From Octopus sinensis (Eukaryota), in the NCBI RefSeq assembly GCF_006345805.1, contig NC_042998.1:153698001-153762000 (forward strand): a stretch of 64,000 nt of DNA, in the 5' to 3' direction. Position 1 is the stretch's first letter, and each line of letters begins with the position of its first letter. The notes under the pieces were generated by a model. It did no database searches. It was given only the letters and a program-made list of their open reading frames with translations, and was not told the DNA's origin. The translations under genes were made by a program, and so were the position numbers. This document shows positions 4,804-63,595 of this stretch, in pieces.

Positions 4804-4952
4804 GCATAGTGGTGTGCAATGGGAGTTCCTGGAGCAGATATGTAGGGACCTGTATTTGATTGAACGCTGCTCTCAGAGGGACTGTTAGACAAAGAGTCAT
4901 TAGCAGTACTGTGTCTTCTAACCACTTTGCCTTCTGCATCAGCCATATAATT
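4804..4952 (-). CDS. FNBP1L: Internal exon of FNBP1L/CIP4-family gene, end of HR1 and Ser-rich linker
   Basis: NYMADAEGKVVRRHSTANDSLSNSPSESSVQSNTGPYISAPGTPIAHHY; acceptor ttttctgctgcag|AAT in phase 0 matching the previous exon; donor GC|gtgagt; 149 nt. Confidence 0.85.
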
Positions 4953-10711: not shown

Positions 10712-10844
10712 CTCAAATTTGATCAGTTCCTGGTTCAATCGGTCAAGTTTCTGTGCGTTCTCTTCCAGTTTTTTATCCAAGCTGCTAGCATCACCAAGTG
10801 CTGGATTGTTTATGTATACATCTTTCATCTTCAGCATACCCTCC
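10712..10844 (-). CDS. FNBP1L: Internal exon of FNBP1L/CIP4-family gene, HR1 domain C-terminal half
   Basis: (R)EGMLKMKDVYINNPALGDASSLDKKLEENAQKLDRLNQELIKFE matches family KMKDVYxxNPxxGD motif. Acceptor tttcatag|G, donor GAG|gtatt; 133 nt, phase 2 to 0, joins the previous exon in frame. Confidence 0.92.
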
Positions 10845-18464: not shown

Positions 18465-18577
18465 CTTTCAGCTGTTTCTTTACCAATTTCTTTGTTTATA
18501 AGATCAATCTTCTGCTGTAGTTTCTTCCTCCTCTGATTGGGGGGTAGATCACTGAAGTCTTCTTTCTGATCATCCAC
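18465..18577 (-). CDS. FNBP1L: Internal exon of F-BAR protein (FNBP1L/CIP4/TOCA-1 family), start of HR1 domain
   Basis: Translates [37 protein letters not shown](R), matching the family motif [17 protein letters not shown]. Acceptor ataattcag|GTG, donor GAAAG|gtat; 113 nt, phase 0 to 2. Confidence 0.92.
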
Positions 18578-19104: not shown

Positions 19105-19191
<87 letters not shown>

Positions 19192-19193
<2 letters not shown>

Positions 19194-19748
19194 GCCCTGA
19201 TGCAGAACCAGGCAGTGGCTCTCATGGCTTCTGATCTTAACTGATTAGAAGTGTTATCATGTACATTGTTTTGTCCTGGTATAAAAGATGGGCTACAGCA
19301 AATATTCTGCTCAATACCACAGATTTGCTTGTCAGTTGTTTGACCATAACCAGTTGAGCATGTCCCTTAGTGGCTGACGATATGTGCATCTCTGATCACG
19401 AGCAGAAGTAGTGGGGGAGCATCATAGCCATGTGTTGAGAGGGATTCTTTGGGGTTTGAATAATTCACCTCTGGAAACATGGGTGGTTCTTTCAACATCC
19501 TTAAACAACCCTTATTCAGGGACCTTTTGAGCGGGATGGGCTACTCAACCTGAAGAAAATTCTAACTGGGCCCCACCTGCAAGGTCATGTGCTTGTTTAT
19601 CTTGATATGAGATCATCATGTCGCGCACATATGGTTGTGATGCATGTGCCTGGTGTACCTTTATCAGACGGGTAGTCATGATGGGTATATTGGGCTTCGT
19701 ATATTTTACCCCAGTGTCACTTCGATGGCATGAACTGCTCTCTCACTC

Positions 19749-19786
<38 letters not shown>

Positions 19787-20372
19787 TAACAATAATAATA
19801 ATAATAATAATAATAATGCCCTGATGCAGTACCAAGCAGTGGCTCTCATGGCTTCTGATCTTAACTGATTGGAAGTGTTATCATGTACATTGTTTTGTCT
19901 TGGTATAAAAGATGGGCTACAGCAAATATTCTGCTCAATACCACAGATTTGCTTGTCAGTTGTTTGACCTTAACCAGTTGAGCATGTCCCTTAGTGGCTG
20001 ACGATATGTGCATCTCTGATCACGAGCAGAAGTAGTGGGGGAGCATCATAGCCATGTGTTGAGAGGGATTCTTTGGGGTTTGAATAATTCACCTCTGGAA
20101 ACATGGGTGGTTCTTTCAACATCCTTAAACAACCCTTATTCAGGGACCTTTTGAGCGGGATGGGCTACTCAACCTGAAGAAAATTCTAACTGGGCCCCAC
20201 CTGCAAGGTCATGTGCTTGTTTATCTTGATATGAGATCATCATGTCGCGCACATATGGTTGTGATGCATGTGCCTGGTGTACCTTTATCAGACGGGTAGT
20301 CATGATGGGTATATTGGGCTTCGTATATTTTACCCCAGTGTCACTTCGATGGCATGAACTGCTCTCTCACTC

Positions 20373-20404
<32 letters not shown>

Positions 20405-20408
20405 TAAC

Positions 20409-20439
<31 letters not shown>

Positions 20440-20993
20440 CCCTGATGCAGTACCAAGCAGTGGCTCTCATGGCTTCTGATCTTAACTGATTGGAAGTGTT
20501 ATCATGTACATTGTTTTGTCTTGGTATAAAAGATGGGCTACAGCAAATATTCTGCTCAATACCACAGATTTGCTTGTCAGTTGTTTGACCTTAACCAGTT
20601 GAGCATGTCCCTTAGTGGCTGACGATATGTGCATCTCTGATCACGAGCAGAAGTAGTGGGGGAGCATCATAGCCATGTGTTGAGAGGGATTCTTTGGGGT
20701 TTGAATAATTCACCTCTGGAAACATGGGTGGTTCTTTCAACATCCTTAAACAACCCTTATTCAGGGACCTTTTGAGCGGGATGGGCTACTCAACCTGAAG
20801 AAAATTCTAACTGGGCCCCACCTGCAAGGTCATGTGCTTGTTTATCTTGATATGAGATCATCATGTCGCGCACATATGGTTGTGATGCATGTGCCTGGTG
20901 TACCTTTATCAGACGGGTAGTCATGATGGGTATATTGGGCTTCGTATATTTTACCCCAGTGTCACTTTGATGGCATGCACTGCTCTCTCATTC
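19192..20993. repeat. Three tandem copies of a ~560-bp dispersed repeat separated by (AAT)n, period ~623 bp
   Basis: Units at about 19192-19748, 19815-20372 and 20436-20993; a diverged partial copy lies at about 28896-29315. Confidence 0.95.
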
Positions 20994-21710
20994 AATAATA
21001 ATAATAATAACAATAATAATAATAGTCGTCGTCATCGCCATCATCATCATCATCAAGCAAAAGCATTGAAGATGCAATACCACACTGATTGCATATCAGA
21101 ATTCCATAAAAAGCAGACTATTCATAAATAACCTGATGTTATCTTTTAAGAGCCTGGGTGGAGACACAGAAGATAATATACCTCCTGAAGCAGAAGAAAC
21201 CTGCTAATTTTGGAATAACATGTGGAGGCACAAGGTTTCCCATGACTACAGTGCCGAGTAAATTCATTCCATGAGATCCAAACTCCAGTACCTTGAGGAT
21301 CCAAGGCAGGAACATGTATGCATAACCGATCTATCTGCACAGGTATCAAAACAGCCAAACTAAAGTGGTTTAGGTTAACACACAAATGAATTGGCTTGCA
21401 ATTAAACAATTGCCTACAGGATGGTGCAGTTCCAGAATGGAAAGTAGAGTGAAAGACAACATTGTTAATGGGAGATCAATAAAAGGGCCATGAGGCTGGC
21501 AATTACCAACCTATTGCTAATCTTAATCTCTTATGGAAAGTATTAACAAGCATCTTCACAAGAAAAATACATATGTTACTTGTAGAAAACAATCTACTTC
21601 TAGTAGAACATAAAGGATACTATTTTCATTTTGTATCTGGTTTGAATCTGTGTGTTGAAACAAATTTTTGTTGTGTGTGCTGAGAGTCATACTGTCTTAA
21701 TATCTAACAA

Positions 21711-22757: not shown

Positions 22758-25440
22758 CATCATCATCATCATAATTGTTGTTTAACGTCCGCTTTCCATG
22801 CTAGCATTGGTTGGACAATTTGACTGAGGGCTGGCAAACCAGATGGCTGCACAAGGCTCCAATCTTGATCTGACAGAATTTTTACAGCTGGATGCCCTTC
22901 CTAATACCAACCACTCCAAGAGTGTAGTGGGTGCTTTTACGTGCCACTGGCATGAGGGCCAGTCAGGTGGTACTGGAAACAGCCACACTCAAATGGTGTT
23001 TTTTACGTGTCACCTCCACAGGAGCCAGTCTAGTGGCACTGGCAACGACCTCGCTCAAATGTTTTTTCCCGTGCCAGTAAGGTGACGCTGGTAACGATCA
23101 CGCTCAAATGGTGCTTTTTTCGTGCCACCAGTACGGAAGCCAGTTAGCTGCTCTGGCAACGATCATGCTCGGGTGGTGCTCTTACCACTCCACTAGCATG
23201 AATACCAGTCATCGAATTTGATTTCGATTTCACTTGCCTCAACAGGTCTTCACAAGTAGAGTTTAGTGTCCAATGAAGGAGAGGTACGCATAAGTGGGCT
23301 GGTTACACCCCTGGCATAGGCCACGAGATTATGGTCTTATTTGGCTTGCCGGGTCTTCTCAAGCACAGCATATTTCCAACAGTCTCGGTCACTAGTCATT
23401 GCCTCAGTGAGGCCTAATGTTTGAAGGTCATGCTTCACCACTTCATCCCAGGTCTTCCTGGGTCTACCTTTTCCACAGGTTCCCTCAACCGCTAGGGCGT
23501 GGCACTTTTTCACACAGCTATCCTCATCCATTCTTGCCACATGACCATACCAGCGCAGTCATCTTTCTTGCACACCACATCTGATGCTTCATAGGTCCAA
23601 CATTTCTATCAAGAAACTTACACTCTGTCGAGTATGCACACAGACATTGCACATCCATCAGATCATACTGGCTTGATTCATTGTGAACTTATGCATGTCC
23701 TCAGCAGTCACGGCCCGTGTTTCACTACCATGTAGCATGGCTGTTCATACATATGCGTCATACAGTCTACCTTTTAACTCTAAGTGAGAGGCCCTTTGTC
23801 ACCAGCCGAGGTAAGAGCTCTCTGAACTCTGCCCAGGCTATTCTTATTCTAGCAGCTGCTCTTTCAGTGTACCCTCCCCCTCTACTGTCTTCGTAACCTA
23901 GGTAATGGAAGCTATCAACTCCAAGCTTTTCTCCCTGGAATGTGGCGGAAGTTGTTCTCTGCACATTTTCAGTGTTTATTGCTCCTGAGCATCTGCCACA
24001 TATAAAAACTATCTTCCTTTGATATTGCTGCCCCTCTTATGTGTCCATAGCTTACACTGGGTACATCTTATAGAGTTTCTACCTATGCCTTTTCTACAGA
24101 TCGAGCAGGGCCATCTACCTGAAGGGGTTTGTGGTTTGCCTGCCTTCCTACTTATTAGGACTTTGGTTTTAGCTAGGTTGACTCTAAGGCCCTTTGATTC
24201 TAATCCTTGTTTCCACACCTGAAACTTCTCTAGTTCTGATAGTGACTCAGCAATTAGAACAAAGTCATCAGCGTAGAGGAGTTCCCAGGGGCATCCTGTC
24301 TTGAATTCCTCCGTTATTGCCTGGAGAACTATGATAAATAGGAGGGGGCTAAGGACTGAACCTTACCTATACCCTCACCTTACTTACAGTGTCCCTGTAC
24401 ATGGCTTGCACAGCTCTCACTAACCATTCATCTATCCCTAGTTTCCTCATTGACTACCAGATAAGAGTCGGAGGACCCTGTTAAAGGCTTTCTCCATGTC
24501 AGCAAAAGCCAGGTACAGAGGTTTATCTTTGGCTAGGTATTTCTCCTGCAGCTGTCTTACCAGAAATATAGCATCAGTGGTGTTTTCCATGGTACAAACC
24601 CAAACTGCATCTCATCTAAACTGACTCTCTCCCTAATCAGTTGGGCTATGACTCTCATCGTGACCTTCATTACCTGATCCAACAACTTGACACCTCTGTA
24701 ATTATGTGTATCTAAAGCATCACCTTTACCTTTGTAGCAGTTGACTATGGTGCTGCTACACCAGTCATTGGGTATCACTCCTTTGTGTATCACCTGGTTA
24801 ATTATATGGGTGACTAGGCTATAGCCGACGCTGCCAGATATTTTGAGCATCTCTACAGTGATTCCTGATGGGCTGGGGGCTTTCCCTGTCTTCATACTCT
24901 TAATTGCTTTATCTACCAAGGTATTGTCAACTCAGATAGCTGGTCCCTCTGTTGGGTTGACATTCGGCAGATTCTCTTTCTCCCACTCATTTTCTTTATC
25001 CAGCAATCTTTCATAATGGCGTCTCCAAACCTCTCTCTTTGCAGACTCGTTTAGTGCAAGTGAACCATCATCCATGTGAACACATTTCTCTCCCACAACA
25101 TTACGATTCTCTCTCACACACTGTCTTGCAACACGAAATACCTTAAGTCTCTGGTCCTCACGGCACAGAACATTGGCAAAGTTTTTCTTATCTGCTTCCC
25201 TTCTGGCTAAATAAACCTGCCTCCTAGCTTCTCTTCTGGCAGTCTGATACAGTTCCCTGCTACCACTATTCTTCCAGTCTTTCCAAGTCTGTTTCTTTTT
25301 TCTAATAGCCGAGTCAACAACATTGTTCCACCACCATGTTATTTTGGGTAGAGAGGGGACTTTGCACCATCCACAGATCTGGTCAGTGGCCCTCAACAGG
25401 TTGTCCTGTAGAACTCTCCAGTTGTCCTCTACATCGTATG
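22758..25440 (-). mobile_element. 5'-truncated RTE-clade LINE (copy A), frameshifted
   Basis: ORF pieces 24932-25453, 24557-24919, 24009-24218, 23337-23540 give the RT (NYRGVKLL, YADD), a Cys-rich finger and GRPRKTW; 3' tail ggacgttaaac then (gat)n. Confidence 0.93.
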
Positions 25441-26062
25441 AGAAATGGCTCATGACATGTTACTGCATTTGTGGATTCTGGAAACAGTGGACATGTGTGT
25501 ATAAGTGGAGAATTTCAGTACACTAATCAAGAACAGCATGCCTAGTTGGAAAACACATCTTTTCTATAACTGAGGTAACAATCAAAAGAGGTATCTTCCT
25601 GGGAGATTCTTGTCCACTTTTGCTATTTTTTATAGCCTTGATCCCACATCCAAAGTTGTTCTCCACAAAGTCAACACAAACTACAAGCTGACAACGAATG
25701 GACCTTATCTCAAGCAGCTTCTTTTTATGGATGATTTAAAATTGTTCACAAAAACAGACTGAAATAGAAAGGCTGGTTGAGACTACAAATGTGCAGCAAG
25801 GATATAGGAATGGAATTTGGGATCTCAAAGTGTGCAGCACTCACTTTGAAATGAGGGAAAAAGAGCAGATTGCAGCGGTATATATTTGCCAAACAGAGCA
25901 AATAGGTGACCCAGATGATGATGGGTACATGTACCTTGAGAGCCTGCAACTAGACAACATCTTGCATAGAAAAATGAAAGACAAGGTTACTGCTGCATAT
26001 TTGAAGTGCCTCAAACTTCTCTTCCAATCAAAACTCATGTAAGGAACCTTGTGAATATTATG

Positions 26063-29859: not shown

Positions 29860-32615
29860 ATAGAAATGCCAGATTAGCATCTGGTGGGGTTAAACCTGTC
29901 TCATGGGAGGAGGGGCCCCCTTAGCCTTTGTTGGCAACCCCTCTAGAGAAGGTGACTCAATAAAAACACTGATGGTCGTGCCACCTCAACACCAAAATTT
30001 TCAGGAGTAAAAATGTCAAATACAAAGATATTAAAACAATGGATTGAACAAGATTGGCACCAAAAACCAAGTACATGAGGGTAGGTGTGGACTCTTGGAG
30101 CCTTGGCTAGCAATTCACCTAGTGATGGTGTCATAATAAAAATGCTGGTGATTGCACCTTACAAATGCTACCTCTAAATGAGTGATGTCAAAATTAAATA
30201 ATAACCACAACTGTGCTAACAGGTCTGGAACTGTTAAAAGTGAAAGAGTCACACAAGGCAGGCAGGGAGTATCTGGTCAAGCTCTGGCAGGTCATCATCA
30301 AGCTATTGATTAGGAACAAAATTGCAGTCAAAAGTGCAAAAGAAAAAGATGTAAACAGAATAGTAATAAAATGCTGCCCGAGAAGTGAGCCAAATAAAAG
30401 AGGCTTCATGAATAAAATAAAGAGAATATGTGATGAAAAAGGAGGTATCGAAGTATTTGCTCAGCGACTGATAGACTAAGCAAGAGCAATCCATAGGAAT
30501 AACTGGATTACAGGAGTAGAGATTGAAGAAATTCAGAGAAACATGATAAAAAAAGAACAGAAGGAGCAGCACAGAAAATCTACTAAAGATGGTTAAAAAA
30601 GAACAGGTGGTGAAGCATGTAATGGGAGAAAAGGACAAGAATAAAATACAAAGAGAGCATGTAAGAGAGATCAAAGAGAAACCTCAGCATGGCCAATTTT
30701 GAGAGTCACTGTAGACGTAAGGGGAACAAATTCCTGGGCTTCGTTAAAAAAGGGGCAATTAAAAAAAGAAACAGAAGACCTAGTTGTAGTAGTCCAAGAT
30801 CAAGTGATAAAAACAAACAACTTGAAGAAAAATCTATATAGAGAGAATGTGTCAAGAAAAATGTAGAGCCTGTGGAACTTGGAATGAGACAGTGGCACAC
30901 TGGCACACACTGTGGAAGAATGCCCCAAGTTGGCACAGGAAGAATATAAGAAATGGAGGTACAAACAGGTTATAAAAGTTTTACATTGGAAATTGTACAA
31001 GAAATGGGAATTTGAAGTTGGAAACACAAAACGATCATCGAATCAAAAGAGTACTGGAGAGATGTAATATTTAGTGGGACTTTCCTATTTAACCCTTTCA
31101 TTACTATATTTCTGACCAAAATACACCCCTTATGTGTTTCAATTAATTTCTAACGTAATCATAAATTTAGTCTGGTTTCATTAAACAACTATAACTTTTT
31201 TATTTATCAATATATCAACGTGAATTTTGGAAGATAATTTAATGAAATGTTCTCAACCAATTCTATACTATAATTTTTGTCACAAAGTGACTCTAATTGC
31301 AGGTAGATACAGGTAAATTCAACAAAATATAAAATTATTAAAATTTTGTTCAAACATCGCTATAGAAAATGGGTTATTAGCTAATATTCAATTGGGTATA
31401 CAACAAAATTTTACGATAGAATTTGTTATTCTGGGTAACTTTCTGATACCCATAATAATATTTATGGCAAAATAGTTTTAATTTCATTTAAGGTTATGGG
31501 AAACCACTTTCTTTCGTTTTGTTTACATTCAGCATAACGGTTCGTTTCCGCCGTAATGATTTCAAATAGGCTCATTCGAAAAAGTAAAAAGAAATAGTCT
31601 AAGGCTTTACTCTTCTGGGAAAGTCTGTGGCTTGGTCCAGTTTCTTCAGAAAAATCACCGAAAGAAACAGTTTCTAAATTTTCACTCCATTCAGGTGCCA
31701 ATTCATTTTCTTTATCGCTGTCGGAGCTCTCGGATTCACTGTTTTCACTTTCGGAAAATGAAACATCAGATTCATTATCAAATACCACATGCTTTTTTTT
31801 TTCAGTCATAGAGTTAGATTTATGAAGGTCTTCAGTAGAAAATCCTTCGAATTCTGACTCGCTGCTTGAGATAATGAAATTCGTATCCATTTTTTGTCAG
31901 AATTACAAATTTTGAAAACACAATAGGAACAAATTTCGGGAAAAAATCTCCCAAAATTCACGGAATTAAAATTACACTTCGATTTTTGTACAAAACTGTA
32001 GTTGAACTCTGTACGAAGTATAATACGTGTTTTCATGAATGTACTAAAGAGATTTGCTCTGATATTCTCATTTAAATATGAAGAGGTAAATTCGGGCGGT
32101 TTTGGGCGGCTTGGTCACATTAACCAAAATTTTTTTCGGGCGGTTTGGTAACGAAAGGGTTAAACAGACAAGAAATTAGAAAATAACAGACCAGACATAA
32201 TGATTGTAGATGAGGAAAAGCAAAGTTGCCTACTTATTGACCCATCATGCTCATTTGCTTCCAGGATCGTAAAGAAATATGAAGAAAAACAAAATAAAAT
32301 ACAATCCTTTATAGTTTGAAACAAGAAGAATTTGGAGTATGCGAACAGTACAGTCGTGCCTATAATAGTTGATGCGTTGGGAGCAATAAGCCAAGATATA
32401 GACAAATGGCTGAAGAAGATTGAAATAGAATGCCTGGTGGAGCTCCTACAGAAAGTTTGTCTCTTAGGGACAGCAAGGATTATCAGGAGGGCACTAGGCA
32501 CTTGAAAGACTGCTGAAAACTTGTGGATACCTAAGGTTGCAGGTGGCAACCTGCTCTCCACATGGTTCCTACCAGGAATAAGACTGAACCTGAGCCAAAC
32601 CAAAATAATAATAAA
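29860..32615 (+). mobile_element. Internally deleted R4/Dong-like (REL endonuclease) LINE
   Basis: N-terminal KCCPRSEPNKRGF...QRLID piece; C-terminal KKETE..QDQ, CCHC-type remnant, WDFPI-TDKKLENNRPDI and VVPIIVDALG; AAT-rich tail. Interrupted by piggyBac. Confidence 0.75.
31093..32159 (-). mobile_element. Internally deleted piggyBac element with TIRs and TTAA duplication
   Basis: TTAA|ccctttcattac ... gtaacgaaaggg|TTAA (1 mismatch). ORF 31462-31890 is an acidic transposase N-terminus with DYFFLLF..EIITAETNRYA..W..ITLNEIK. Confidence 0.9.
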
Positions 32616-37020: not shown

Positions 37021-37892
37021 TTCTTGACTTAAACTGAATATCTAATCTAATCTAGCAAATTAAAAACATTATATTTGATAAATACAAGAAGGTTCTATTA
37101 CAGTCAGTTGATAAAAACTGGTAGCATCTAGCTAGACAATTGCTACAGTAATCTATTGCATTAGTTATTTCACATCTAGTTAATTTTTTAGTGATATAAT
37201 TTGATAATTTTACATTAAAAAAAAAACACTCTTTTGGTAGATCTATAAAGGACATAAATTATTTGTTGCTAGTTTGATAAAATTTGAATTCATTGAATTC
37301 AAATATTTAAAAAATTTGTTTTTAGTGATTGGTGTACAAGTGAATGGTAAATGGTTGCTTACATCCTGATACAAATATTTCAAGTCAAAATGAAAGTAAA
37401 TTCAAAAGATCCCCAAGGAAGTAAACCCACATCTATTCCCTAGAACTATGGTATATTCATATACCATCGGACAATTTATGCTGTCATTTTAGCATTCACA
37501 GTACATTTGAAAATCATTTAAAATCTTAAACCTGTGTATTTCTGGTCTCTTTTTAATTTATTACTATGAATTTATGATTGCAAATATCTTTATTATTTTG
37601 TTACTGAAAGTAGTGATCAGTGATTAATTAATTCAAGCTATTTTCTTAGGTACCCAAATTTGAGTGTCATACTTTAGAAATGTAAACATATGTCATTAAA
37701 ATCAAAAATAAGTTGATCAATAAAATAAATGTAGGATCAGAAATAACACAATCTAAATGAAATTTACACAATCATTGTTAATTTTTTGAGTGATTGTGGT
37801 GCACACACCACAACATGAACAACAAATACATGCAGAGCAAAATGTGCCAAACTCAATAATACTTCTACTGTAAAGCACATGAATATACATAC

Positions 37893-37907
37893 CAGTAATC
37901 CAATGAT
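37893..37907 (-). CDS. Candidate 15-nt microexon (IIGLL in phase 0) in the F-BAR to HR1 linker
   Basis: Long pyrimidine tract ending tttttctctctcaaaag|ATCATTGGATTACTG|gtatgt; frame-preserving; TGCATG motifs nearby. No transcript evidence. Confidence 0.55.
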
Positions 37908-39375
37908 CTTTTGAGAGAGAAAAATGAAACAAAAGAAAGATCAATACAAAAAGACAGGAGGCACAAGAAATAAAATAAAGTAACACTACACACACACACA
38001 TACATGCATGCACACACATTTGCCATCCACCAAAAATAAATATAAGATATCAATATTCACAAGCAACAATACTTTAACAATGAAAAACTGTTGGGAAAGT
38101 ATTTCTGCAGTAACACAATTTCAAAAACATCTGATATAAAAACATCAGGTAAAAGATTTAAATTATTTTCTTGATAAATTTATTCCTGGAAATTGTTGAT
38201 TAAAAGAAACTACTTAAAAAAATTATTGGTCATTACCAGAATAAAATAAAATGAATATCCAACAAAACTCGCACCTCACAGAAATAAACAGATTAAAGAT
38301 ACAGTTATTTTGAATTGCTAACATGGAAATCTATAATAATAAACACAAAATTCTGTCTGTCCAGGACCCCTCTATCTCAGTCTATATTTGCTCTACATAG
38401 ACATATACCTTTTTGGAAAAAGGATGATCCTTTGATTGTAAATCTGCCCTTCATTTGGTTCTTGAATATTCAGCATTGGGATCTGATTTAAAAGCACTTG
38501 GGTTGCTATTTCTAGCAGGTAAATCTTGGTTGATTCATGCCATCCTGCTTGGCACTTGTCATATGACATCAGAGATCAAGGGGGAGATAAATGACATTCA
38601 CTTTGTTAATTTTTCATTGAGATAAGAACTTTGGGACAAATTGACCAACAGTTGGAATTCAACTTGGGAGTGGAACATTAGAATTACAAAATTAATTCTC
38701 ATCCGTCTTTAACCTCTGGTAAAACACTACCGGGCATACAATCATTACAAACATATTATAGTCATGATATTTAGTTCTCTTTAGAGTGTGGCTTTTAAGA
38801 TAGTATTCTAATAAAACAGAATTCTCTGTAAGCTAACTAAAAGAAAGCAAACTGATGCAGCATTTATATAAGAGAAATCAATTTAGTGTGCACAGGATGT
38901 CTAAATGGAGAGGGTAAGGCAATTTTCTTTTAAAAGTCATTTTGACATAATATTTTTTGCAAAATTATATAAATTATTTTAACAAAATTTTGGTATAACT
39001 AATTGAGAGAAAAAATATTCCAAATAGAATTTTAAAAGACCTACCTTATCTAAGTACTTATTATCAGTTCAAAAGTCAGCAAAAGAAGAAAAAAAAAAGA
39101 AAAAAACGGGGGTGGGGTTTATCTCAAAGGAGAAAAAAAATTAGTTCACACACAATATTACAAATAAATTATATCATTTGCAGTACTATTTGCACACTTC
39201 CAAACCATCTGATTGACCAGTCTGAAGTTTTAATTCATTTTAATAATTATAAAAAATATGTTAAATAAGTACTTTAGCAATGTAAAGGATTTGTTGAATT
39301 AAACTATTCTAAGTGCTCTGTTAGGAAAGCTAAGCCTTGTAGTCACTAGTAACAACAAATAGTAGGAACACTTAC

Positions 39376-48370: not shown

Positions 48371-48745
48371 TCTCTCTCTATATAAACGGCAGTTTGTCTG
48401 TGTGTGTTTCTGTGTGTCTGTTTGGTTGTACCCTCACTCTGACCACGGCTTTCAACCGATTCTGATGAAACTTGACACACACATAGCCCAATGTCATAAT
48501 TCAAAACTAACGCAGCGAAAATTTTGAAAAGTTCCCCCAGTTCTGAAAAAGATCGATAAATTCGACATGGGGTCGACTATCAGAAACACAAACCACAGAT
48601 GGTCTAGGGGACGCAACTCGACCTTTTTAACTATCAAAAAAAACTTTACCATCATTTTTTTCCCCATTTTTTTGCTATAACTCTCTAAAAATGCTTTATA
48701 GTTATTTCCCTTACAAACCCGAGCAACGCCGGGCGATACTGCTAG
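48371..48745 (+). mobile_element. Complete non-autonomous Helitron
   Basis: A|TC 5' terminus, subterminal hairpin cccgagcaacgccggg (48718-48733), 3' CTAG|T, no TSD. Confidence 0.75.
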
Positions 48746-48829
48746 TCTATAAATATAAACCATCCGATTTTCTGAGTACCTCATTTCTTCTAATATAAAT
48801 ACCTGTACATCATCTAAAAACCTTCCAAT

Positions 48830-48855
48830 ACATATATATATATATGTATACATAT

Positions 48856-48903
<48 letters not shown>

Positions 48904-49663
48904 ACACATATATATATGTATACATATATATATGTACATATATATACACACGTATATATATATATATATATATGTATCATATACATATATATATAATATA
49001 TAACCACACATATATATATGTATACATATATATATATGTACATATATATATATACACACACATATATATATATATATGTATACATATACATATATATATA
49101 TATGTATATATATAATACACACATATATATATGTATACATATATATATGTACACATATACAATATATAATATATATACACACATATATATATACATATAT
49201 GTATCTACATATATATATACATACATTATATAATATATACATATTATACATATATACATATATATACATCATATATATATTATATATATGTGTAAATATA
49301 TATATATATCATATATACATATATATATATATTACATATTTATATATATACATATATATATATATATATCTATATATGTATACATATATATATATCATAT
49401 ATATTATATATTATATATATATATACACTATATATATATATATTATATATATATATATATGATACATATATATATACATATATATATAATATATATGTAC
49501 CTATATATATATATCCACATATATATATATATGTATCTATATAATATATATACAAACATATATATATGTATATATATATGTATATATATATATTATGTAT
49601 ATATATATATATACACACATATATATAATGTATATATATATATATGTATACATATATATATAC

Positions 49664-49694
<31 letters not shown>

Positions 49695-49710
49695 CACATA
49701 TATATATATG

Positions 49711-49744
<34 letters not shown>

Positions 49745-49751
49745 TACACAC

Positions 49752-49784
<33 letters not shown>

Positions 49785-49955
49785 TATGTAATATATATAT
49801 ATATATACACACTATATATATATATGTAATATATATATAATGTATACATAATATATATGTATATATATTATACCATATATAATATATATGTACTATATAT
49901 ATATACACATTATATATGTATATTATATATATATACACATATATGTATATATATG

Positions 49956-50003
<48 letters not shown>

Positions 50004-50527
50004 CATATATATATATATGTATATATATATATGTATGTATATATATATATATATATGTATATATATCTATATATATATATATATATATATGTATAATTAT
50101 GTATATATATGTATATGTATATATATGTTATATATATATATATAATAGATATATATACTATATTATTATGTATCTAAGTATATATATATATATATGTTAT
50201 ATATATTATATTTATACATATATGTATATATATGTATATATATATATTATATAATTTATACATATATGTATATATATGTATACATATTATGTATATATTG
50301 TATACATATATGTATATATATGTATACTATATGTATATATATTTATAACATATAGGTTATATATGTATACATATATGTATATATATGTATACATATATGT
50401 ATTATATATGTATACATATATGTATATATATGTATACATATATGTATATATATGTATACATATATGTATATATATGTATAACATATTGTATATATTATAT
50501 ATATATTATATATATATATATATATAT
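48830..50527. repeat. ~1.7-kb (TA)n-rich compound microsatellite
   Basis: Almost exclusively TA with TG/CA interruptions. Confidence 0.97.
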
Positions 50528-52546: not shown

Positions 52547-53652
52547 TGTTACGGTTGGCTAGGTGCATTTCTGGTGACCCACTTAGGAGCAATGGCGCCG
52601 GCATGTCTGGTAAAGAAAGTGACAGGTTCCTTGTTTAATGGGTTTTGGAAGGACCTTTGCCCTTGTGCCGGTCGAGAAAGGGTCAGGAGAATGTGAAAGA
52701 GGAGGACAGATTAAGGGAATCTGAGGGCAGATAGAGGGGAAGAATCTAGAGCTGTCATGAGAGAGATAGAGTATAAGGCTAAAGGGACAGATGGAGAGGG
52801 TAATAGATTGAGGCGATATAGATAGAGTAAGGAATCAGATAGCAAATAGAAAGGCTATATGTGGGAGATGAGGGAGTGGAAGAAGGACAGAGACGAAGTG
52901 AGGTCTGGGCAGTCGTTGAGCGGTCGTCGAAGAAGACAGACGGATCTTGCAGTCGCTGGCCGGTCCTCGAGGAAGACAGTCAGATCCTGGAGGTCAGAGC
53001 GAGTAGATGGAATCTTAGAAGCGTTGGAATCTTAGCGAGCAAGCTGGGATGCAAGAAAGCTTGGCGGCACAGAAGGGATATGTACAGAGGATTTAGCAGT
53101 ATTGAGAGGAATGGGACACTGGCGATTCAATTAGGAATTGAGTATGTGTTTGTGCATTGATACGTGTCACGATGTATTGAACATGGAAAAGAACAGTCCA
53201 GGACTTGTCGATATGTCGATTATCGAGTTGTGGTATTTATGTTCAGAATTGAGTAAAGGACTTGTTGATGTGACTTTATCTGTGATGTTTAGAAAGAGAC
53301 TTTAAAGAACTGTTGTCTTCGGACGTGAACTTTGAACTGTACTCTTGAATGCTGTTGTATTATGCTTTGATCTGTTGTATGATGTATTGAGTAGTCACGT
53401 GCATGTCTTCCTTTAAATGTCTGCCTTAAATGTATTTGATGTGTAGCAATTGATTGTCATATAAACTGTTGTTTGAATATAAGCCAGTGTCTCTGTTGCC
53501 TTGCCTCTCTTTGGGTTGTATCTCGGTTGTGCCTCTGTATCTCTGTGCTGCTGAGGTTGTTGTTGTTGCAGTATCTCTCCTCTCTCTCCTCCTCTTTGGG
53601 TTCCGTGCGAACTAGTGGCCGTTCGGCTAGCGACGACGGGGATTCCGTAACA
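52547..53652 (+). mobile_element. Gypsy 3' LTR (1106 bp)
   Basis: Perfect 8-bp terminal inverted repeat TGTTACGG...CCGTAACA, preceded by a polypurine tract. Confidence 0.8.
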
Positions 53653-53778
53653 TATATATACATATATATATATACACATATATATAATAATATATATATA
53701 TATACACATATATATATAGACATATATATATATATAATATATATAGATATAATATATATTATACACATATATATATAT

Positions 53779-53817
<39 letters not shown>

Positions 53818-54091
53818 TATATATATAAATATATATTATATATATAATATACATATAATATATATATATAATATATATACATATATATATATATATAATA
53901 CATATATATATATATATATATATACCATTATCTATACATATATATATATATACATATATATATATATGCACATATTATTACATATATATAGTATCTTATA
54001 TATACAATATATATATATGTATATATATCAATATATTATGTATATATACATACATATATATATAACACACATATATTATATACATATATAT

Positions 54092-54122
<31 letters not shown>

Positions 54123-54192
54123 TATATATACATATATATATATACATATATACATATACATCATACATATATATATACATATACATATATAT

Positions 54193-54227
<35 letters not shown>

Positions 54228-54309
54228 GATATATACACACATATATATACCTATAATATATGTGATAATATATATATATATATATATATACATATATATA
54301 ATATATATG

Positions 54310-54364
<55 letters not shown>

Positions 54365-54655
54365 GTATATATGTAATATACATTATATATATATGTATAT
54401 GTATATATATACACATGTATATTATACACATATATATATATTACATATAGAACTGTTTCATTCAAGAGAAATCTTCAGGAGCTCTCCTGAAGATTTCTCT
54501 TGAATGAAACAGTTCTAGTCCTGTAGAAGCTCCTTCTATATAATAAATTATATGTATATATATATATATGTATATATATATATTATATAATATATGTAAT
54601 ATATATATGTGTATATATATATATGTGTATATATTATATATATATATATTATGTG

Positions 54656-54688
<33 letters not shown>

Positions 54689-54746
54689 GTGTATATATTA
54701 TGTGTATATATATATTCTGTGTATATTATATATATATGTGTATATA

Positions 54747-54787
<41 letters not shown>

Positions 54788-54908
54788 GTATATGTATATA
54801 TTATATTATATATTATATGTATATATATATATATGTATATATTATTGTATATATAATATATGTATATATATATATATGTATATATTATATGTATATATAT
54901 ATATAATG

Positions 54909-54942
<34 letters not shown>

Positions 54943-54960
54943 TATATTAATATATATATA

Positions 54961-55002
<42 letters not shown>

Positions 55003-56084: not shown

Positions 56085-59061
56085 CTTTCTAGCAACTGCC
56101 ATTTGGTGCATGAGAGAGTTCGATGCAGCTGCCCTCATCTGCCCCTCCTGCCGTGAAGTTGGTTCATCTGGGACACCTGACAGGAAGATCCAGCTTCATT
56201 TTAAAGACATCTGTATCCACCCCATGCAGGTCTCTCAGGTTCTTCGGGAGATTTGAAGAGCTGTGGGCCTCGAAGCCCAGGCTATCACAGAATCTTGTCC
56301 TACATCTTGATGGGCAAGTTTGGAGTCCTAGGCACCACACTGGCGCCCAGTTCTGGCATTTGCGTAACTCTCGATGCCAAAGTTCAGGACACGTCCCTCC
56401 AGGATCTTCCGGATGTATATAATGGTATATCTTTCCCGCCTACGCTCCAGGGAATATAGTTTTAATCTCTTGAGTCTTTCCCAGTAGCTTACATTCTGCA
56501 TAGAGGCTATCTTCTTCGTATAGCTACGTTGGATCGCCTCGAGCTCTGTGATCAACTTGACACTGGATGGTGACAATAACTGAGAGCAGTAGTCAAAGTG
56601 GCTTAGGACAAGTGTCCTCCAGAGGACCTTCATGTTTTCTTGTTCTCTTCTGTCTTTTCTAAGGTTCTGAGGATCCATCCGGCCAGTCGTCTACATTTCA
56701 TTGCCAATTTAGCACCATGTACACGAAAGGTCGCGTTCATCACTCATGTAAATACCTAGGTCACGCACTGATTGTGCCTCTGGGATTGCTATTCCTCCTC
56801 GGTTCAGTGTATTCATTGTGGTATTGTGCATTTAGTTTTGCATGCTGATAGTATAGAGCTTGAAACTTTTCAGCATTGAACTGCATGCTATTCTTTTCGC
56901 CCTTGTATATTTTGTCTACTCACATTGCGGTGTTTAGTGTCCTCAGGGTTCTGTATTGCCTGTGAAACTTTTGTATCATCTGCATAACTTGTGATCGTGG
57001 CTCTCTGCGTAGCTGAGGGCATGTCTGAGAGGGCCATTATGAACAGTAGTGGTCCCAAAACAGTGCCCTGCGGAACACCGCTTACTATTTGCGTGTTAAT
57101 GGAAGTGGCCACATTGGCCACTACCACCTGACTTCTATCTTTCAGAAAGTCATGAAGCCATTCTCCCAGTTTTCCAACTATGTTGAGATCACGAAGTTTG
57201 TGACATATCATTCCCTGATCGACTTTATCAAAGGCCTTTGCAAAGTCGAGATATATCACTTCCACATTTGAGTGGTTGAGCAGCCGTTTCAGCACCCAGT
57301 CATAGTGTTGTAGGAGCTGAGTTAAACAGCTTCTCCCTGGTCGGAAACCATGTTGGGTGTCGGGCAGCAAGTCATTCTCTTCAAGGAAGGTGATCAGCTT
57401 CCTTCTGACTATTCGTTCCATGACCTTGCTGATGTGTGAGGTCAGAGAGATAGGTCTATAGTTCTTGGCTTCCGCTCTGCTACCTCCTTTATGAATGGGG
57501 CATATTTTACCTTCCTTCAGTTTTCTTGGGAGGTTGCCAGCTGCAAGGAAGCTCTGAAAGAGGAACTGCAGTGGTCTTGCTAGGACTCTCTTACATGCTT
57601 TTCGGAGGATTGCCGGGAATCCATCGGGGCCAGTAGCTGAGTCTGTTTTCATTTCATCTATAGCCTTGATTACATCGTCTTCCTTTATATCGATGTAATC
57701 TATCGTCGCCGCCTCTGATTTTATATCTGCAGTGGTAAAAAAGTCAGTTGGATTGGTGATTTGGAGATGCCCAAGGGGTGGAGTGAAAACACTCTTGAAT
57801 TGCTCATTCAGTATTTCACTTACCCTCATTGGTTTTCCTGTAAGTGTGCCATCCTTTTCGAGGAGTGGCCCTATTCTACAGTGCACTGTAGCTGTTTCTT
57901 TGGCATACCTGTAGAAAGCTCTGGGGTTAGATTTTATGTTGTCTATAGCCCAGGCTTCTTTGTCTGCTCTTTCCCTTTCATGGGAGAGTTTCAGACATTT
58001 TTCGATTTCCAACAGTTTTATTTTTAGGCGGGACTTTTCACTGCTTTCAATCTGTTTGTTTAGGCGATTTGAAAATTTTGTACGCCGTCTCATTAAAATT
58101 TTCCTCTCTCTGGGGATTTTGTTTTTGTGTACAGTGGCCTTTCTCTCTGGGACACATTTGTAGCATATGGCTTGCATTACAGACATGAATTGTTGAAGTT
58201 TCACGTCGATGTCTGGCGAGGAGAGACATTTAGGCCAGTTTTGTTTGAGGATCTTTCTCAATTTGTTTCCAGTTTGCCTTATGGTAGTTCAAGCTGGAAA
58301 GATTCTGAGGGTTTCTTGTAGGCCATGTCCGTGCTCTCTTTTGGCCCGTACATGGTCAGCTCTATCATGTTGTGATCCGAGAGTAGTGTCGGTGTCACTT
58401 TCACATTATGGATGAGATCCATGTCATTTGTGAAGCAGAGATCCAGTGTGTTACCTGCCCTGGTTGGTTGGAGTATTACCTGCTCCATGTACAGGGTGTT
58501 GATGAGGTTCAGGAGGGACTTCGCCTGTCCTCGTTCACATCTTGTCATTCCTGGGAGAGAAAGGCCCTCGGGCCATCTGACATTGGGCAGATTGAAGTCT
58601 CCCATAGGAAGTACACTTATGTGTTGTTCTAATGTGGTTAGAACTTCTATTTTTATAAGGCAGTCTTCAAATTTGCCCACATGGCTTGGGGCATCTGGAG
58701 GGCGATATGTAGCACACACAACTACATCAAGTTGCCTAATATGTACAATTAGTGTGTCACACACCGAGTTTGAGTATGACAAGAGGACCTGGGGTGTGAG
58801 GTCCTCACGGATGTACATAGCAACACCTCCATGACTCCTTTCTTTCCTGTCGGTCCGTAGTACAGCATACTGTGGTATGTGTAACTCCGCATCTGCTATC
58901 CGTTTCAGGTGCGTTTCTGTAAGTGCTATGCATAAGGCTTGATTGCATGCAACAAAGTCTCTCAGGAACGGGATTTTTGTCCTGTTACTGAGTGTTTGCA
59001 GTCCTCTGATGTTCAGTAGGAGCATCGAGGTGAGGTGTACGTTGTTACCGGTGGTGTCCAT
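56085..59061 (-). pseudogene. LINE ORF2 (APE endonuclease + reverse transcriptase), frameshifted
   Basis: LLNIRGL, LTETHL, GDFNLP, NTLDL, SDHN (EN); NYRPISLTS, QHGFRPGRSC, YLDFAKAFDKV, GVPQGTVLGPLLF, YADD (RT); LERRRERY. Frameshifts near 58270 and 56920. Confidence 0.93.
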
Positions 59062-59919: not shown

Positions 59920-59974
59920 GCTGGATGATCTGTCTATTTGTTTATCTATCTAACTATGTTCGAGAGAAGACAAG

Positions 59975-63574: not shown

Positions 63575-63595
63575 TTGATATATATATACACACAC

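What the first reader, a model, noticed from the sequence alone, without database searches (positions are those of the whole stretch)
37893..37907. Candidate 15-nt microexon in the F-BAR to HR1 linker with neural-type splicing signals
Seen (minus): ~60-nt pyrimidine tract with UC repeats, AG|ATC ATT GGA TTA CTG|GTATGT, TGCATG ~60 nt downstream (37829-37834) and ~100 nt upstream (~38003-38012); phase 0 fits the HR1 exon. Established: TGCATG is the Rbfox motif; as I recall, vertebrate FNBP1/FNBP1L/TRIP10 are alternatively spliced in this linker, including short 5-residue inserts, with effects on membrane tubulation. Inference: a homologous or convergent tissue-regulated microexon in a cephalopod.
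Basis: partly seen in the sequence, partly recalled or inferred. Interest (0 to 1): 0.7.

Follow-up and report, generated by a model that had tools for sequence, protein, structure and literature searches.

The report
Conserved 15-nt microexon before HR1 domain
A 15-base mini-exon (five hydrophobic residues, IIGLL) lies in a huge intron just before the Cdc42-binding HR1 domain of a TOCA/FNBP1-type membrane-bending gene; a very distant relative keeps its splice sites, length and reading frame, so it is almost certainly real, and it mirrors a known vertebrate FNBP1 mini-exon.

Summary
On the minus strand, AG|ATCATTGGATTACTG|GTATGT lies at 37907-37893. A 60-nt tract upstream is 80% pyrimidine. 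TGCATG lies 59 nt downstream and TGCATGCATG about 100 nt upstream. The next exon (18577, HR1_TOCA domain) starts in phase 0.

The signals alone are only suggestive. The decisive evidence is an orthologous locus, L003. Its 4-fold degenerate sites are 54% different from the window, and none of its introns align. Even so, a 71-nt island lies 4.2 kb upstream of its HR1 exon: AAG|ATCATAGGAATGTTG|GTATGTAT.
- The exon length is the same, and AG and GTATGTAT are intact.
- There are two synonymous changes and one Leu-to-Met change (IIGLL to IIGML).
- One alternative frame has a stop codon; the other changes three of its four full codons.
- Single-base indels begin right after the 5' splice site.
- TGCATGTATTT is also kept downstream (+59 versus +75).
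- Both species have a 78-95 nt AG-free zone upstream.

So this is very probably a real coding microexon. It is probably a regulated cassette with an Rbfox-type downstream enhancer.

Not shown: inclusion in mRNA, tissue specificity, and the taxon. The SRRM4-type UGC motif is absent. A later check showed that TGCATGTATTT, but not the bare 6-mer, is frequent and repeat-associated in the window, so that cue is weak. The closest parallel is the vertebrate FNBP1 alternative exon (LSLK-) next to HR1.

The parts
37893..37907 (-). 15-nt microexon ATCATTGGATTACTG, read in phase 0 as IIGLL.
   Evidence: Sequence. The L003 ortholog is ATCATAGGAATGTTG (IIGML), with the same length and the same AG/GT boundaries. 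Frame +1 has a stop in L003, and frame +2 gives HWIT versus HRNV.
37908..37985 (-). 3' splice region. It holds the AG (37909-37908), the 80%-pyrimidine tract with UCUCUCUC (37910-37969), and a 78-nt AG-exclusion zone. Branch-point candidates (UUUAU/UUGAU) lie at -70, -65 and -35.
   Evidence: L003 has a 95-nt AG-free zone and a CUGAU at -79. Both gaps are in the top ~2% of inter-AG gaps.
37885..37892 (-). 5' splice site GTATGTAT, preceded by CTG.
   Evidence: All 8 bases are identical in L003. It is as close to consensus as the 5' sites of the neighbouring constitutive exons, AAG|GTATTT and GAG|GTATTG.
37865..37879 (-). Conserved downstream intronic block TGTGCTTTACAGTAG. It contains a YGCY (UGCU) and a GU-rich core. 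Its binding factor is unknown.
   Evidence: L003 has TGTGCTTTA-AGTAG. Two 1-nt indels between the species in this stretch show it is not coding.
37824..37834 (-). TGCATGTATTT, a candidate Rbfox-type (U)GCAUG intronic splicing enhancer 59 nt downstream of the microexon.
   Evidence: The same 11-mer lies at +75 in L003 (L003 266-276). TGCATG occurs only about once per 3 kb on this strand. Caveat: this 11-mer is common in the window, so its recurrence in L003 is weak evidence (see the full report).
38003..38012 (-). Upstream TGCATGCATG. It is probably incidental, because it is embedded in a TG/TGCA microsatellite.
   Evidence: No TGCATG occurs in the 175 nt of upstream flank that L003 holds.
18465..18577 (-). 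HR1 exon 1 ([37 protein letters not shown]-). It starts in phase 0 and is the acceptor for the microexon.
   Evidence: PF25610 hits. 86.9% nucleotide identity to L003 4348-4469.
10712..10844 (-). HR1 exon 2 (-REGMLKMKDVYINNPALGDASSLDKKLEENAQKLDRLNQELIKFE).
4804..4952 (-). Next coding exon (NYMADAEGKVVRRHSTANDSLSNSPSESSVQSNTGPYISAPGTPIAHHY-).
   Evidence: The 5' splice site is GC|GTGAGT.

Best explanation
The 15 nt at 37907-37893 (minus strand) are a genuine coding microexon of a TOCA/FNBP1/CIP4-family gene.

Position and product:
- The microexon lies in an intron of more than 45 kb. It is 19.3 kb upstream of the first HR1 exon, and the previous exon is more than 26 kb away, outside the window.
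- When included, it inserts five hydrophobic residues (IIGLL) four residues before the conserved [17 protein letters not shown] start of the Cdc42-binding HR1 coiled coil. It does not change the reading frame.

Proposed splicing mechanism (inferred):
- The exon is too short for ordinary exon definition.
- It relies on a good 5' splice site (CUG|GUAUGU) and on a long UC-rich pyrimidine tract with a distal branch point and a 78-nt AG-free zone. The AG itself is in a poor context (AAAAG).
- Inclusion is probably switched. An Rbfox-type protein could promote it by binding the downstream UGCAUG (+59).
- Where a PTB-type protein is abundant, it probably represses inclusion by binding the UCUCUCUC/UUCUUC tract.
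- This would make it a tissue-regulated cassette (neurons and/or muscle).

Proposed protein effect (inferred, weakest step): the hydrophobic pentapeptide changes how the linker or the N-terminal cap of HR1 behaves. It could add a small membrane-inserting or packing element next to the polybasic region, or alter HR1-Cdc42 binding or autoinhibition. Either would tune membrane tubulation against actin signalling, as linker isoforms do in vertebrate FBP17 and CIP4.

Shown: the sequence anatomy, the gene family, the phase, and conservation with a coding signature.

Inferred: actual inclusion, alternative status, the regulators, and the protein effect.
For: 1. Gene identity and phase. HR1_TOCA hits. 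PDB FNBP1L at 4e-23 and CIP4 at 1.5e-20. HR1 exon 1 starts ttcag|GTG in phase 0, and the spliced product is an open frame, [13 protein letters not shown]....

2. Orthologous island in L003.
- Only the three exons and this 71-nt island align between the loci. BLAST E = 3.6e-6 with a 401-nt query, and 6e-4 for the locus-against-window search.
- The island is colinear and on the same strand, 4.2 kb upstream of the L003 HR1 exon.
- Neutral divergence is near saturation: 22 of 41 four-fold sites differ, and there are 55 synonymous against 3 non-synonymous codon changes.

3. Coding signature.
- The length is exactly 15 nt in both species, and AG and GTATGTAT are intact.
- The 4 substitutions give IIGLL to IIGML. 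Only 1.8% of random 4-substitution sets are as conservative.
- Frame +1 carries TAG in L003.
- Single-base indels start just after the 5' splice site.

4. Regulatory anatomy kept in both species. There are long AG-free zones of 78 and 95 nt, in the top ~2% of inter-AG gaps. Branch-point candidates are distal, the tracts are UC-rich, and TGCATGTATTT lies at +59 and +75.

5. A third organism. ORF P0053 contains KDHWITGMY. This is the frame +2 translation across the 3' splice site, the microexon and the 5' splice site, and it is identical to the window while the flanks differ.

6. No RNA family matches and there is no excess folding (z = +0.47).

7. Precedent. Mouse Fnbp1 has a small alternative exon near the HR1 coiled coil with upstream (CU)n PTBP1 sites (PMC8925968). 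Linker isoforms change tubulation and curvature sensing (PMC6549137; PMC7649350).
Against: - There is no transcript or junction evidence of any kind. The protein databases held no spliced cephalopod product.
- Conservation is shown at the DNA level in only one other species. P0053's DNA could not be retrieved. P0053 carries an odd internal duplication.
- No ortholog was detected within 9.5 kb upstream of the HR1 exon in the more distant locus L004, nor in the short flanks of L001 and L005-L007.
- The upstream exon was not found, so the donor side of the junction is unseen.
- The thresholds used for the decoy count were set after the fact.
- The Rbfox and PTB roles rest on motifs only. TGCATG is not enriched in the window overall.
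- The 11-mer TGCATGTATTT proved common and repeat-associated in the window, so its recurrence in L003 is weak evidence for an Rbfox element (see the full report).
Confidence: 0.72

Rival explanations
1. It is a real microexon but a constitutive one. It would be included in every transcript, so there is no tissue-regulated switch.
For: Conservation of the exon and its splice sites says nothing about alternative use. The 5' splice site is as good as those of the neighbouring constitutive exons. No isoform data exist.
Against: About 40 nt of intron just 3' of the exon are conserved, and a GCAUG lies at a similar distance in both species. Flanking-intron conservation of this kind is typical of regulated cassettes. 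The AG context is poor (AAAAG) and the branch point is distal. The vertebrate counterpart is alternative (PMC8925968). The compact non-cephalopod gene in L014 joins its linker exon to its HR1 exon in phase 0/phase 0, with no obvious 15-nt exon between them.
Confidence: 0.17
2. It is an SRRM3/4 (eMIC-domain) dependent neural microexon, a member of the bilaterian neuronal microexon programme.
For: The length is 15 nt. The UC-rich tract is long, the branch point is distal and the 5' splice site is good. These match the architecture described for such exons (bioRxiv 10.1101/2024.09.17.613571). The host gene is a membrane and cytoskeleton gene.
Against: The characteristic UGC between the pyrimidine tract or branch point and the AG is absent in both species. 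The nearest UGC is at -56 in the window, and there is none within 100 nt in L003. That motif is present in 74-79% of SRRM3/4-dependent microexons. The mouse Fnbp1 exon is a striated-muscle event controlled by PTBP1 and QKI.
Confidence: 0.15
3. The conserved 71-nt island is a non-coding intronic element that never appears in mature mRNA. It could be a decoy or pseudo-exon that helps process the very long intron, a recursive-splicing site, or a transcriptional enhancer.
For: It sits in an intron of more than 45 kb, where recursive or decoy sites are known to act. No transcript evidence is available.
Against: There is no AG|GTRAGT juxtaposition, as a recursive site needs: the AG is followed by ATCATT. 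The exact 15-nt length and a synonymous or conservative substitution pattern in the required frame are unexpected for a non-coding element. Conservation is centred on the two splice sites. No structured RNA was found.
Confidence: 0.08
4. It is a chance constellation of splice-like signals in an AT-rich intron, and the L003 match is a chance alignment or a shared repeat.
For: Similar AG..GT units with pyrimidine tracts occur 3-5 times in the window when any length from 3 to 27 nt is allowed. TGCATG is at chance frequency.
Against: BLAST E = 3.6e-6. The match is syntenic and in the same orientation, and it is the only intronic match between loci whose neutral sites are 54% different. The region is single-copy in the window and in L003.
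Confidence: 0.03

Closest known systems
Vertebrate FNBP1 (FBP17/Rapostlin) small alternative exon next to the HR1 coiled coil
   Same: It is in the same gene family and the same region: the alternative exon is proximal to the HR1 coiled coil. The published exon oligo CUUUCUCUCAAGCU reads LSLK-, a short Leu-rich insert. UC/CU repeats lie in the upstream intron. Short exons are flanked by very large introns, and inclusion is tissue-regulated (PMC8925968). From my own memory, not tested here: human FNBP1 residues 330-395 read LMSLL + 56 residues + LSLKL, followed by GATPEDFSNLPPEQRRKKLQ. That would place a 5-residue insert immediately 5' of the HR1 exon, as seen here. The 66-residue total agrees with PMC7649350.
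   Different: The peptide differs (IIGLL/IIGML against LSLKL). The exon size and the exon-intron structure of the vertebrate event were not verified here. The vertebrate exon was shown to be controlled by PTBP1 and QKI, with little RBFOX2 effect in C2C12 cells, whereas the motif present in both species here is UGCAUG. Orthology across phyla is not shown: the compact protostome locus L014 shows no 15-nt exon at that place.
Long and short linker isoforms of FBP17 and CIP4 (about 60-residue poly-PxxP / IDR exon; Trip10 168-nt exon)
   Same: These are alternative splicing events in the same F-BAR-to-HR1 linker. They have documented effects on tubulation, localisation, neurite formation and curvature sensing (PMC6549137; PMC7649350; PMC8925968).
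   Different: Those inserts are 56-66 residues, proline-rich and disordered. This one is 5 hydrophobic residues. No such long cassette was seen in the window or in L003 between the microexon and HR1.
Rbfox-activated cassette exons with downstream (U)GCAUG
   Same: UGCAUG lies 59 and 75 nt downstream of the exon in the two species. A downstream position is the one associated with exon inclusion (PMC8925968, citing Sun et al. 2012).
   Different: Only the motif is shown. Binding and dependence are untested.
SRRM3/4 (eMIC) neuronal microexon programme
   Same: The size class, the long UC-rich tract, the distal branch point and the gene-function class all match.
   Different: There is no UGC between the pyrimidine tract and the AG in either species. 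Neural specificity is unknown.

Membership tests
TOCA/FNBP1/CIP4 (F-BAR - HR1 - SH3) gene family | HR1 domain of the TOCA type | tested here: met
   All 51 database relatives carry PF25610 HR1_TOCA. phmmer gives PDB 5FRG FNBP1L at 4e-23 and 2KE4 CIP4 at 1.5e-20.
TOCA/FNBP1/CIP4 (F-BAR - HR1 - SH3) gene family | N-terminal F-BAR/FCH domain encoded upstream of HR1 | tested here: not met
   No F-BAR or linker exon is detectable in window 38000-64000 by eye or by tblastn with the L014 F-BAR and linker exons. It presumably lies beyond the window. L014 shows F-BAR exons upstream of HR1 in a compact relative.
TOCA/FNBP1/CIP4 (F-BAR - HR1 - SH3) gene family | C-terminal SH3 domain | not testable with these tools
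   The gene runs off the low-coordinate end of the window. SH3 ORFs lie downstream of HR1 in the related loci L004 and L014.
Coding microexon (3-27 nt cassette) | Canonical AG and GT boundaries with a polypyrimidine tract and a usable 5' splice site | tested here: met
   Both boundaries are identical in L003.
Coding microexon (3-27 nt cassette) | Length is a multiple of 3, with the frame preserved and a coding-type substitution pattern across species | tested here: met
   15 nt in both species. IIGLL versus IIGML, with 2 synonymous changes and one Leu-to-Met change. The other frames give a stop or radical changes. Random expectation is 1.8%.
Coding microexon (3-27 nt cassette) | Presence in mature mRNA (junction reads or cDNA) | not testable with these tools
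   No spliced cephalopod product is in the searchable protein collections. No RNA-seq access.
Rbfox-regulated exon | (U)GCAUG within about 100-200 nt downstream, conserved across species | tested here: met
   TGCATGTATTT at +59 (window) and +75 (L003). The background rate is about 1 per 3 kb per strand. The 11-mer itself is common in the window (see the full report).
Rbfox-regulated exon | Inclusion depends on Rbfox binding | not testable with these tools
   This needs a minigene, knock-down or CLIP experiment.
SRRM3/4 (eMIC) dependent neural microexon | UGC motif between the branch point or pyrimidine tract and the 3' AG (bipartite UCUCUC...UGC enhancer) | tested here: not met
   The nearest UGC is at -56 in the window, upstream of most of the tract. 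There is none within 100 nt in L003. Definition from bioRxiv 10.1101/2024.09.17.613571.
SRRM3/4 (eMIC) dependent neural microexon | Long UC-rich tract, distal branch point, strong 5' splice site | tested here: met
   78 and 95 nt AG-free zones, yUnAy candidates at -65 to -79, and GUAUGU. No MaxEnt score could be computed.
SRRM3/4 (eMIC) dependent neural microexon | Neuron-restricted inclusion | not testable with these tools
   No expression data.
PTB-repressed exon | UCUU/CUCUCU motifs in the upstream pyrimidine tract | tested here: met
   UCUCUCUC at -12 to -5 in the window, and UUCUUCUUU in L003. Mouse Fnbp1 has a (CU)n PTBP1 site upstream of its exon. Binding is untested.
Recursive splice site / RS-exon | The 3' AG is directly followed by a 5' splice-site consensus (AG|GTRAGT) | tested here: not met
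   The AG is followed by ATCATT.
Ortholog of the vertebrate FNBP1 microexon | Same intron position and phase relative to the HR1 exon, and traceable through intermediate taxa | tested here: inconclusive
   The position next to HR1 agrees (plus my recollection of the human sequence). However, no 15-nt exon was seen in the phase-0/phase-0 linker-HR1 intron of the protostome locus L014, or upstream of HR1 in L004-L007 and L011.

The most novel reading that the evidence does not exclude
The microexon is the protostome ortholog of the vertebrate FNBP1 five-residue, Leu-rich exon that immediately precedes HR1. On that reading, a regulated 15-nt cassette at the linker/HR1 boundary of TOCA-family proteins dates back to the bilaterian ancestor. 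It would have been kept for more than 500 My, together with its UC-rich upstream tract. That would make it one of the few microexons shared between vertebrates and lophotrochozoans, and it would point to a conserved switch in how F-BAR membrane bending is coupled to Cdc42 binding.
Probability: 0.25. Interest if true: 0.65.

Novelty: new member of a known kind. Interest (0 to 1): 0.48.

Why it matters
Microexons are easily missed by gene annotation, and they often act as small switches in trafficking and cytoskeletal proteins. This one is pinned to exact coordinates by a conservation signature, in a protein that couples membrane curvature (F-BAR) to Cdc42/N-WASP actin assembly. It sits at the spot where vertebrate paralogs are also alternatively spliced, with known effects on tubulation and neurite formation.

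If it is regulated in cephalopod neurons or muscle, it offers a clean comparative case for asking whether such switches are ancient or arose repeatedly. It is directly testable: RT-PCR across one junction, a minigene with one motif mutated, and tubulation or Cdc42-binding assays with and without five residues. If it is constitutive, the result is still a correction to the gene model.

Tried and rejected
- I looked for the upstream (F-BAR/linker) exon in window 38000-64000, by six-frame ORF listing and by tblastn with the L014 F-BAR and linker exons. Nothing was found.
- I tried to reach more orthologs through spurious ORFs that overlap the microexon. A concatenated-ORF query and a focused query to the search for homologous proteins both returned nothing.
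- The exhaustive representative search gave only P0053, plus an unrelated repeat protein, P0052.
- Two DNA-pattern scans of JGI metagenome contigs found nothing. P0053's contig therefore stayed out of reach.
- I searched L004 (9.5 kb upstream of its HR1 exon), L005, L006/L007, L001 and L011 with an nhmmer profile of the island and with regexes for AG-15nt-GT units encoding hydrophobic peptides. There was no convincing hit. L004 5505 (IFLGF, with a GTGCAA 5' site) was judged to be chance.
- I tested a structured-RNA or miRNA reading. There was no Rfam hit above threshold and the folding z-score was +0.47. Rejected.
- I tested a recursive-splice-site reading. Rejected on sequence.
- A second colinear match (L003 2387-2454 versus window 31170-31101) is AT-rich and weak. 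I did not take it as an exon.
- Literature searches for the sample and assembly accessions, to name the organisms, found nothing. Searches for 'microexon + FNBP1L' and for the size of the Fnbp1 exon also found nothing.

Full report
**Observation**

On the minus strand the window reads ...gtttcatttttctctctcaaaAG|ATC ATT GGA TTA CTG|GTATGTatattcatgtgctttacagtag.... The 15 nt occupy 37907-37893.
- The 60 nt upstream are 80% pyrimidine and end in UCUCUCUC.
- TGCATG is at 37834-37829 (+59 from the 5' splice site). TGCATGCATG is at 38012-38003.

**Host gene**

The minus strand carries three clear exons downstream:
- 18577-18465: [37 protein letters not shown]-
- 10844-10712: -REGMLKMKDVYINNPALGDASSLDKKLEENAQKLDRLNQELIKFE
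- 4952-4804.

All 51 database relatives of the first two exons carry Pfam PF25610 (HR1_TOCA). The spliced peptide matches the solved HR1 domains of FNBP1L (5FRG, 4e-23) and CIP4 (2KE4, 1.5e-20).

The first HR1 exon starts ttcag|GTG GAT in phase 0. Any exon spliced onto it must therefore end on a codon boundary, so the 15 nt can only be read as IIGLL. The joined sequence is an open frame.

No F-BAR or linker exon is detectable in the 26 kb of window upstream of the candidate. The microexon therefore sits inside an intron of more than 45 kb, and 'F-BAR to HR1 linker' is an inference from the family's architecture.

**Are the signals alone more than chance?**

Only weakly.
- TGCATG occurs 57 times on both strands against 55 expected.
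- The upstream copy lies in a TG/TGCA microsatellite.
- With thresholds set at the candidate's own values, it is the only 15-nt AG..GTRNGT unit with such a pyrimidine tract in 128 kb of sequence (both strands). It is one of 3-5 if any length from 3 to 27 nt is allowed.
- These thresholds were chosen after the fact, so this shows only that the candidate is among the best in the window.

**Conservation (the decisive evidence)**

One HR1 hit (P0019) lies on an 874-kb contig of an ENA assembly. I fetched 20 kb around it as L003.
- Between L003 and the window, only the three exons align at E < 1e-10, at 83-87% nucleotide identity.
- In those exons, 22 of 41 four-fold degenerate sites differ. There are 55 synonymous and 3 non-synonymous codon changes.
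- Neutral DNA is therefore close to saturation, and the introns are indeed unalignable.
- A 401-nt query around the candidate nevertheless finds one match in L003, at positions 149-217 (76% over 71 nt, E = 3.6e-6). It is on the gene's strand, 4.2 kb upstream of the L003 HR1 exon.

The alignment is:
- window: caaaAG|ATCATTGGATTACTG|GTATGTATATTCATGTGCTTTACAGTAG
- L003: gacaAG|ATCATAGGAATGTTG|GTATGTAT-TTTGTGTGCTTTA-AGTAG

What the alignment shows:
- The AG, the first eight intron bases and the 15-nt length are identical.
- The four substitutions give ATT to ATA (Ile, synonymous), CTG to TTG (Leu, synonymous) and TTA to ATG (Leu to Met).
- In the other frames, L003 has a TAG stop (frame +1), or HWIT becomes HRNV (frame +2).
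- Only 1.8% of random sets of four substitutions are as conservative in frame 0.
- Single-base indels appear immediately after the 5' splice site, so the coding constraint stops exactly at the predicted exon end.
- The island is single-copy in both loci. It matches no Rfam family and has no excess secondary structure.

A third, weaker witness is the 45-residue ORF P0053, from a JGI/IMG metagenome contig.
- It was found by an exhaustive search with the frame +2 translation of the region (E = 1.5e-4).
- It contains KDHWITGMY, identical to the window across the 3' splice site, the microexon and the 5' splice site, while its flanks differ.
- Its DNA could not be retrieved.

**Regulatory anatomy shared by both species**

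- The nearest upstream AG is 78 nt away in the window and 95 nt in L003. Both gaps are in the top ~2% of inter-AG gaps.
- Branch-point-like yUnAy sites lie at -65/-70 and -79.
- The tracts are UC-rich.
- The 11-mer TGCATGTATTT lies at +59 and +75.
- There is no UGC between the pyrimidine tract and the AG in either species. That motif characterises 74-79% of SRRM3/4-dependent microexons (bioRxiv 10.1101/2024.09.17.613571).
- The architecture is therefore 'microexon-like': a distal branch point, a weak AG context and a good 5' site. The specific cue present in both species is Rbfox-type, not SRRM4-type.
- Rbfox proteins act in muscle as well as in neurons, so 'neural' is not established.

**A late caveat on that 11-mer**

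After this analysis I was shown a count for the window: TGCATGTATTT occurs about 30 times on the minus strand, against roughly 0.1 expected from the base composition, while the core TGCATG is at chance level.
- The 11-mer is therefore part of a repeat-associated, low-complexity sequence that is common in this genome.
- Finding the same 11-mer near the exon in L003 is consequently much weaker evidence for a conserved Rbfox element than I treated it above.
- What remains is a single TGCATG at a plausible distance in each species. That has a chance probability of a few percent per species.
- I did not repeat this count myself. It should be re-run, and the L003 background measured, before the motif is cited as conserved.
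- This lowers my confidence in the Rbfox part of the mechanism to roughly even odds or below.
- It does not touch the evidence for the exon itself, which rests on the splice sites, the fixed length and the codon pattern.

**Limits of the conservation evidence**

- The more distant locus L004 (HR1 exon 1 about 60% identical) shows no ortholog within 9.5 kb upstream of its HR1 exon.
- The short flanks available in L001, L005, L006/L007 and L011 show none either.
- In L014, a compact non-cephalopod TOCA gene, the linker exon ends ...GGIFHIFGSKG|gtatgt in phase 0 and the HR1 exon starts in phase 0. This confirms the phase logic. Its 1.4-kb intron holds no 15-nt candidate, only an unverified 30-nt one.
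- The exon is therefore shown for the window's lineage and one deeply diverged relative, plus probably a third organism. It is not shown for the whole phylum.
- The organisms could not be named. It is consistent with the very large, repeat-rich introns.

**Comparison with what is known**

- In vertebrates, the linker between the F-BAR domain and HR1 is the alternatively spliced part of this family.
- FBP17L and FBP17S differ by 66 residues starting at residue 330 (PMC7649350). The long CIP4 and FBP17 isoforms carry a poly-PxxP insert of about 60 residues that reverses localisation and tubulation behaviour in neurons (PMC6549137).
- Mouse Fnbp1 has a small alternative exon close to its coiled coil. 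The published 14-nt exon oligo, CUUUCUCUCAAGCU, reads LSLK-. Its upstream intron contains a (CU)n PTBP1 site. Events of that study's panel are included in adult striated muscle and, for some, in brain. PTBP1 represses the Fnbp1 exon and QKI promotes it (PMC8925968).
- From memory only: human FNBP1 330-395 reads LMSLL + 56 residues + LSLKL, followed by GATPEDFSNLPPEQRRKKLQ. This adds up to the published 66 residues. It would place a five-residue, Leu-rich insert directly 5' of the HR1 exon, as seen here.
- I could not verify the vertebrate exon structure with the tools, so orthology versus convergence stays open.

**Mechanism proposed**

Shown:
- A 15-nt phase-0 unit with conserved splice sites, immediately 5' of HR1.

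Inferred:
- It is included as a cassette.
- Inclusion is helped by a downstream UGCAUG-binding factor. This is now only weakly supported, given the caveat above.
- A PTB-type protein on the UC tract probably opposes inclusion.
- The inserted IIGLL/IIGML lies four residues before KEDFSDLPP. There it could add a hydrophobic packing or membrane-inserting element next to the linker's basic region, or alter the N-terminal cap of HR1 and so Cdc42 binding.
- The protein-level effect is speculation by analogy with the vertebrate linker isoforms.

**Verdict**

- The reading 'a real, conserved coding microexon at the linker/HR1 boundary of a TOCA-family gene' is well supported (about 0.8 for the exon itself).
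- The reading 'alternatively spliced and Rbfox-responsive' is plausible but weakly supported.
- 'Neural-type' in the SRRM4 sense is not supported by the motif test.
- It is a new member of a known kind, of moderate interest. Interest would be higher if the exon proves orthologous to the vertebrate FNBP1 exon.

Noticed in passing
window 19100-21000: Three tandem copies of a ~622-nt unit, 98-99% alike, with spacing of 624 and 621 nt. Each carries long trinucleotide runs. They lie inside the intron between the microexon and HR1 exon 1. The period is too long for TRF, but the repeat finder shows it and so do the triplicated ORFs.
   Followed up: partly
window 56891-59949 (minus): A non-LTR retrotransposon with long open frames: endonuclease (PF14529/PF03372, 301 aa), reverse transcriptase (RVT_1, 466 aa), and an upstream 268-aa ORF with a weak Torus/CCCH-like hit. 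It lies in the same orientation as the host gene, inside the long intron.
   Followed up: partly
window 24012-25459 and 9698-10129 (minus): A second reverse-transcriptase fragment (RVT_1), and a Mos1-type transposase HTH_48 fragment in the intron between the two HR1 exons.
   Followed up: partly
window 31101-31170 vs L003 2387-2454: A weak colinear similarity (75% over 72 nt, E = 0.007) between the microexon and HR1 exon 1 in both loci. It is AT-rich with a core CTAaATTTATGATTA..TTAGAA. It is probably chance, but it is the only other colinear intronic match.
   Followed up: partly
P0053 (JGI/IMG metagenome contig of 2707 nt; no locus): This 45-residue ORF is the frame +2 translation of the microexon region in another organism. 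It carries the unit VLFPIAIAKDHWIT twice. The second copy diverges right after the position of the exon's last base (…ITDPSLSV rather than …ITGMY). This could be a local duplication of the microexon or an assembly artefact.
   Followed up: partly
L003 1-270 (minus): The collection's gene caller called a 108-residue 'gene' antisense to the microexon. It reads through two TGA codons. This is an artefact of prokaryotic gene calling on eukaryotic DNA. It may explain why such ORFs could not be found again by protein search.
   Followed up: no
L014 4316-5740: In a compact non-cephalopod TOCA gene, the linker exon (…KKRGGIFHIFGSKG|gtatgt) and the HR1 exon (cag|AATGCTGCA…) are both phase 0. The 1.4-kb intron contains a 30-nt candidate, cag|AAGCTTTCAGAAGTCTGTATGGCAATCAAG|gtatgtgctta (KLSEVCMAIK), with GCATG just upstream. 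Its 5' flank, gtatgtgctta, resembles the conserved gtatgt…tgtgcttta seen here.
   Followed up: no
window 48500-50500, 53400-55000, 63000-64000: Long degenerate (TATG/TATA)n-type microsatellite tracts. They translate as [12 protein letters not shown] in all frames and dominate the composition dips, with GC down to 0.22.
   Followed up: no
L003 versus window, whole loci: The L003 organism has much shorter introns at this gene: microexon to HR1, 4.2 kb against 19.3 kb; HR1 exon 1 to exon 2, 5.5 kb against 7.6 kb; exon 2 to exon 3, 1.1 kb against 5.8 kb. The HR1 peptide is 97-98% identical. Most of the size difference in the window is accounted for by repeats.
   Followed up: partly
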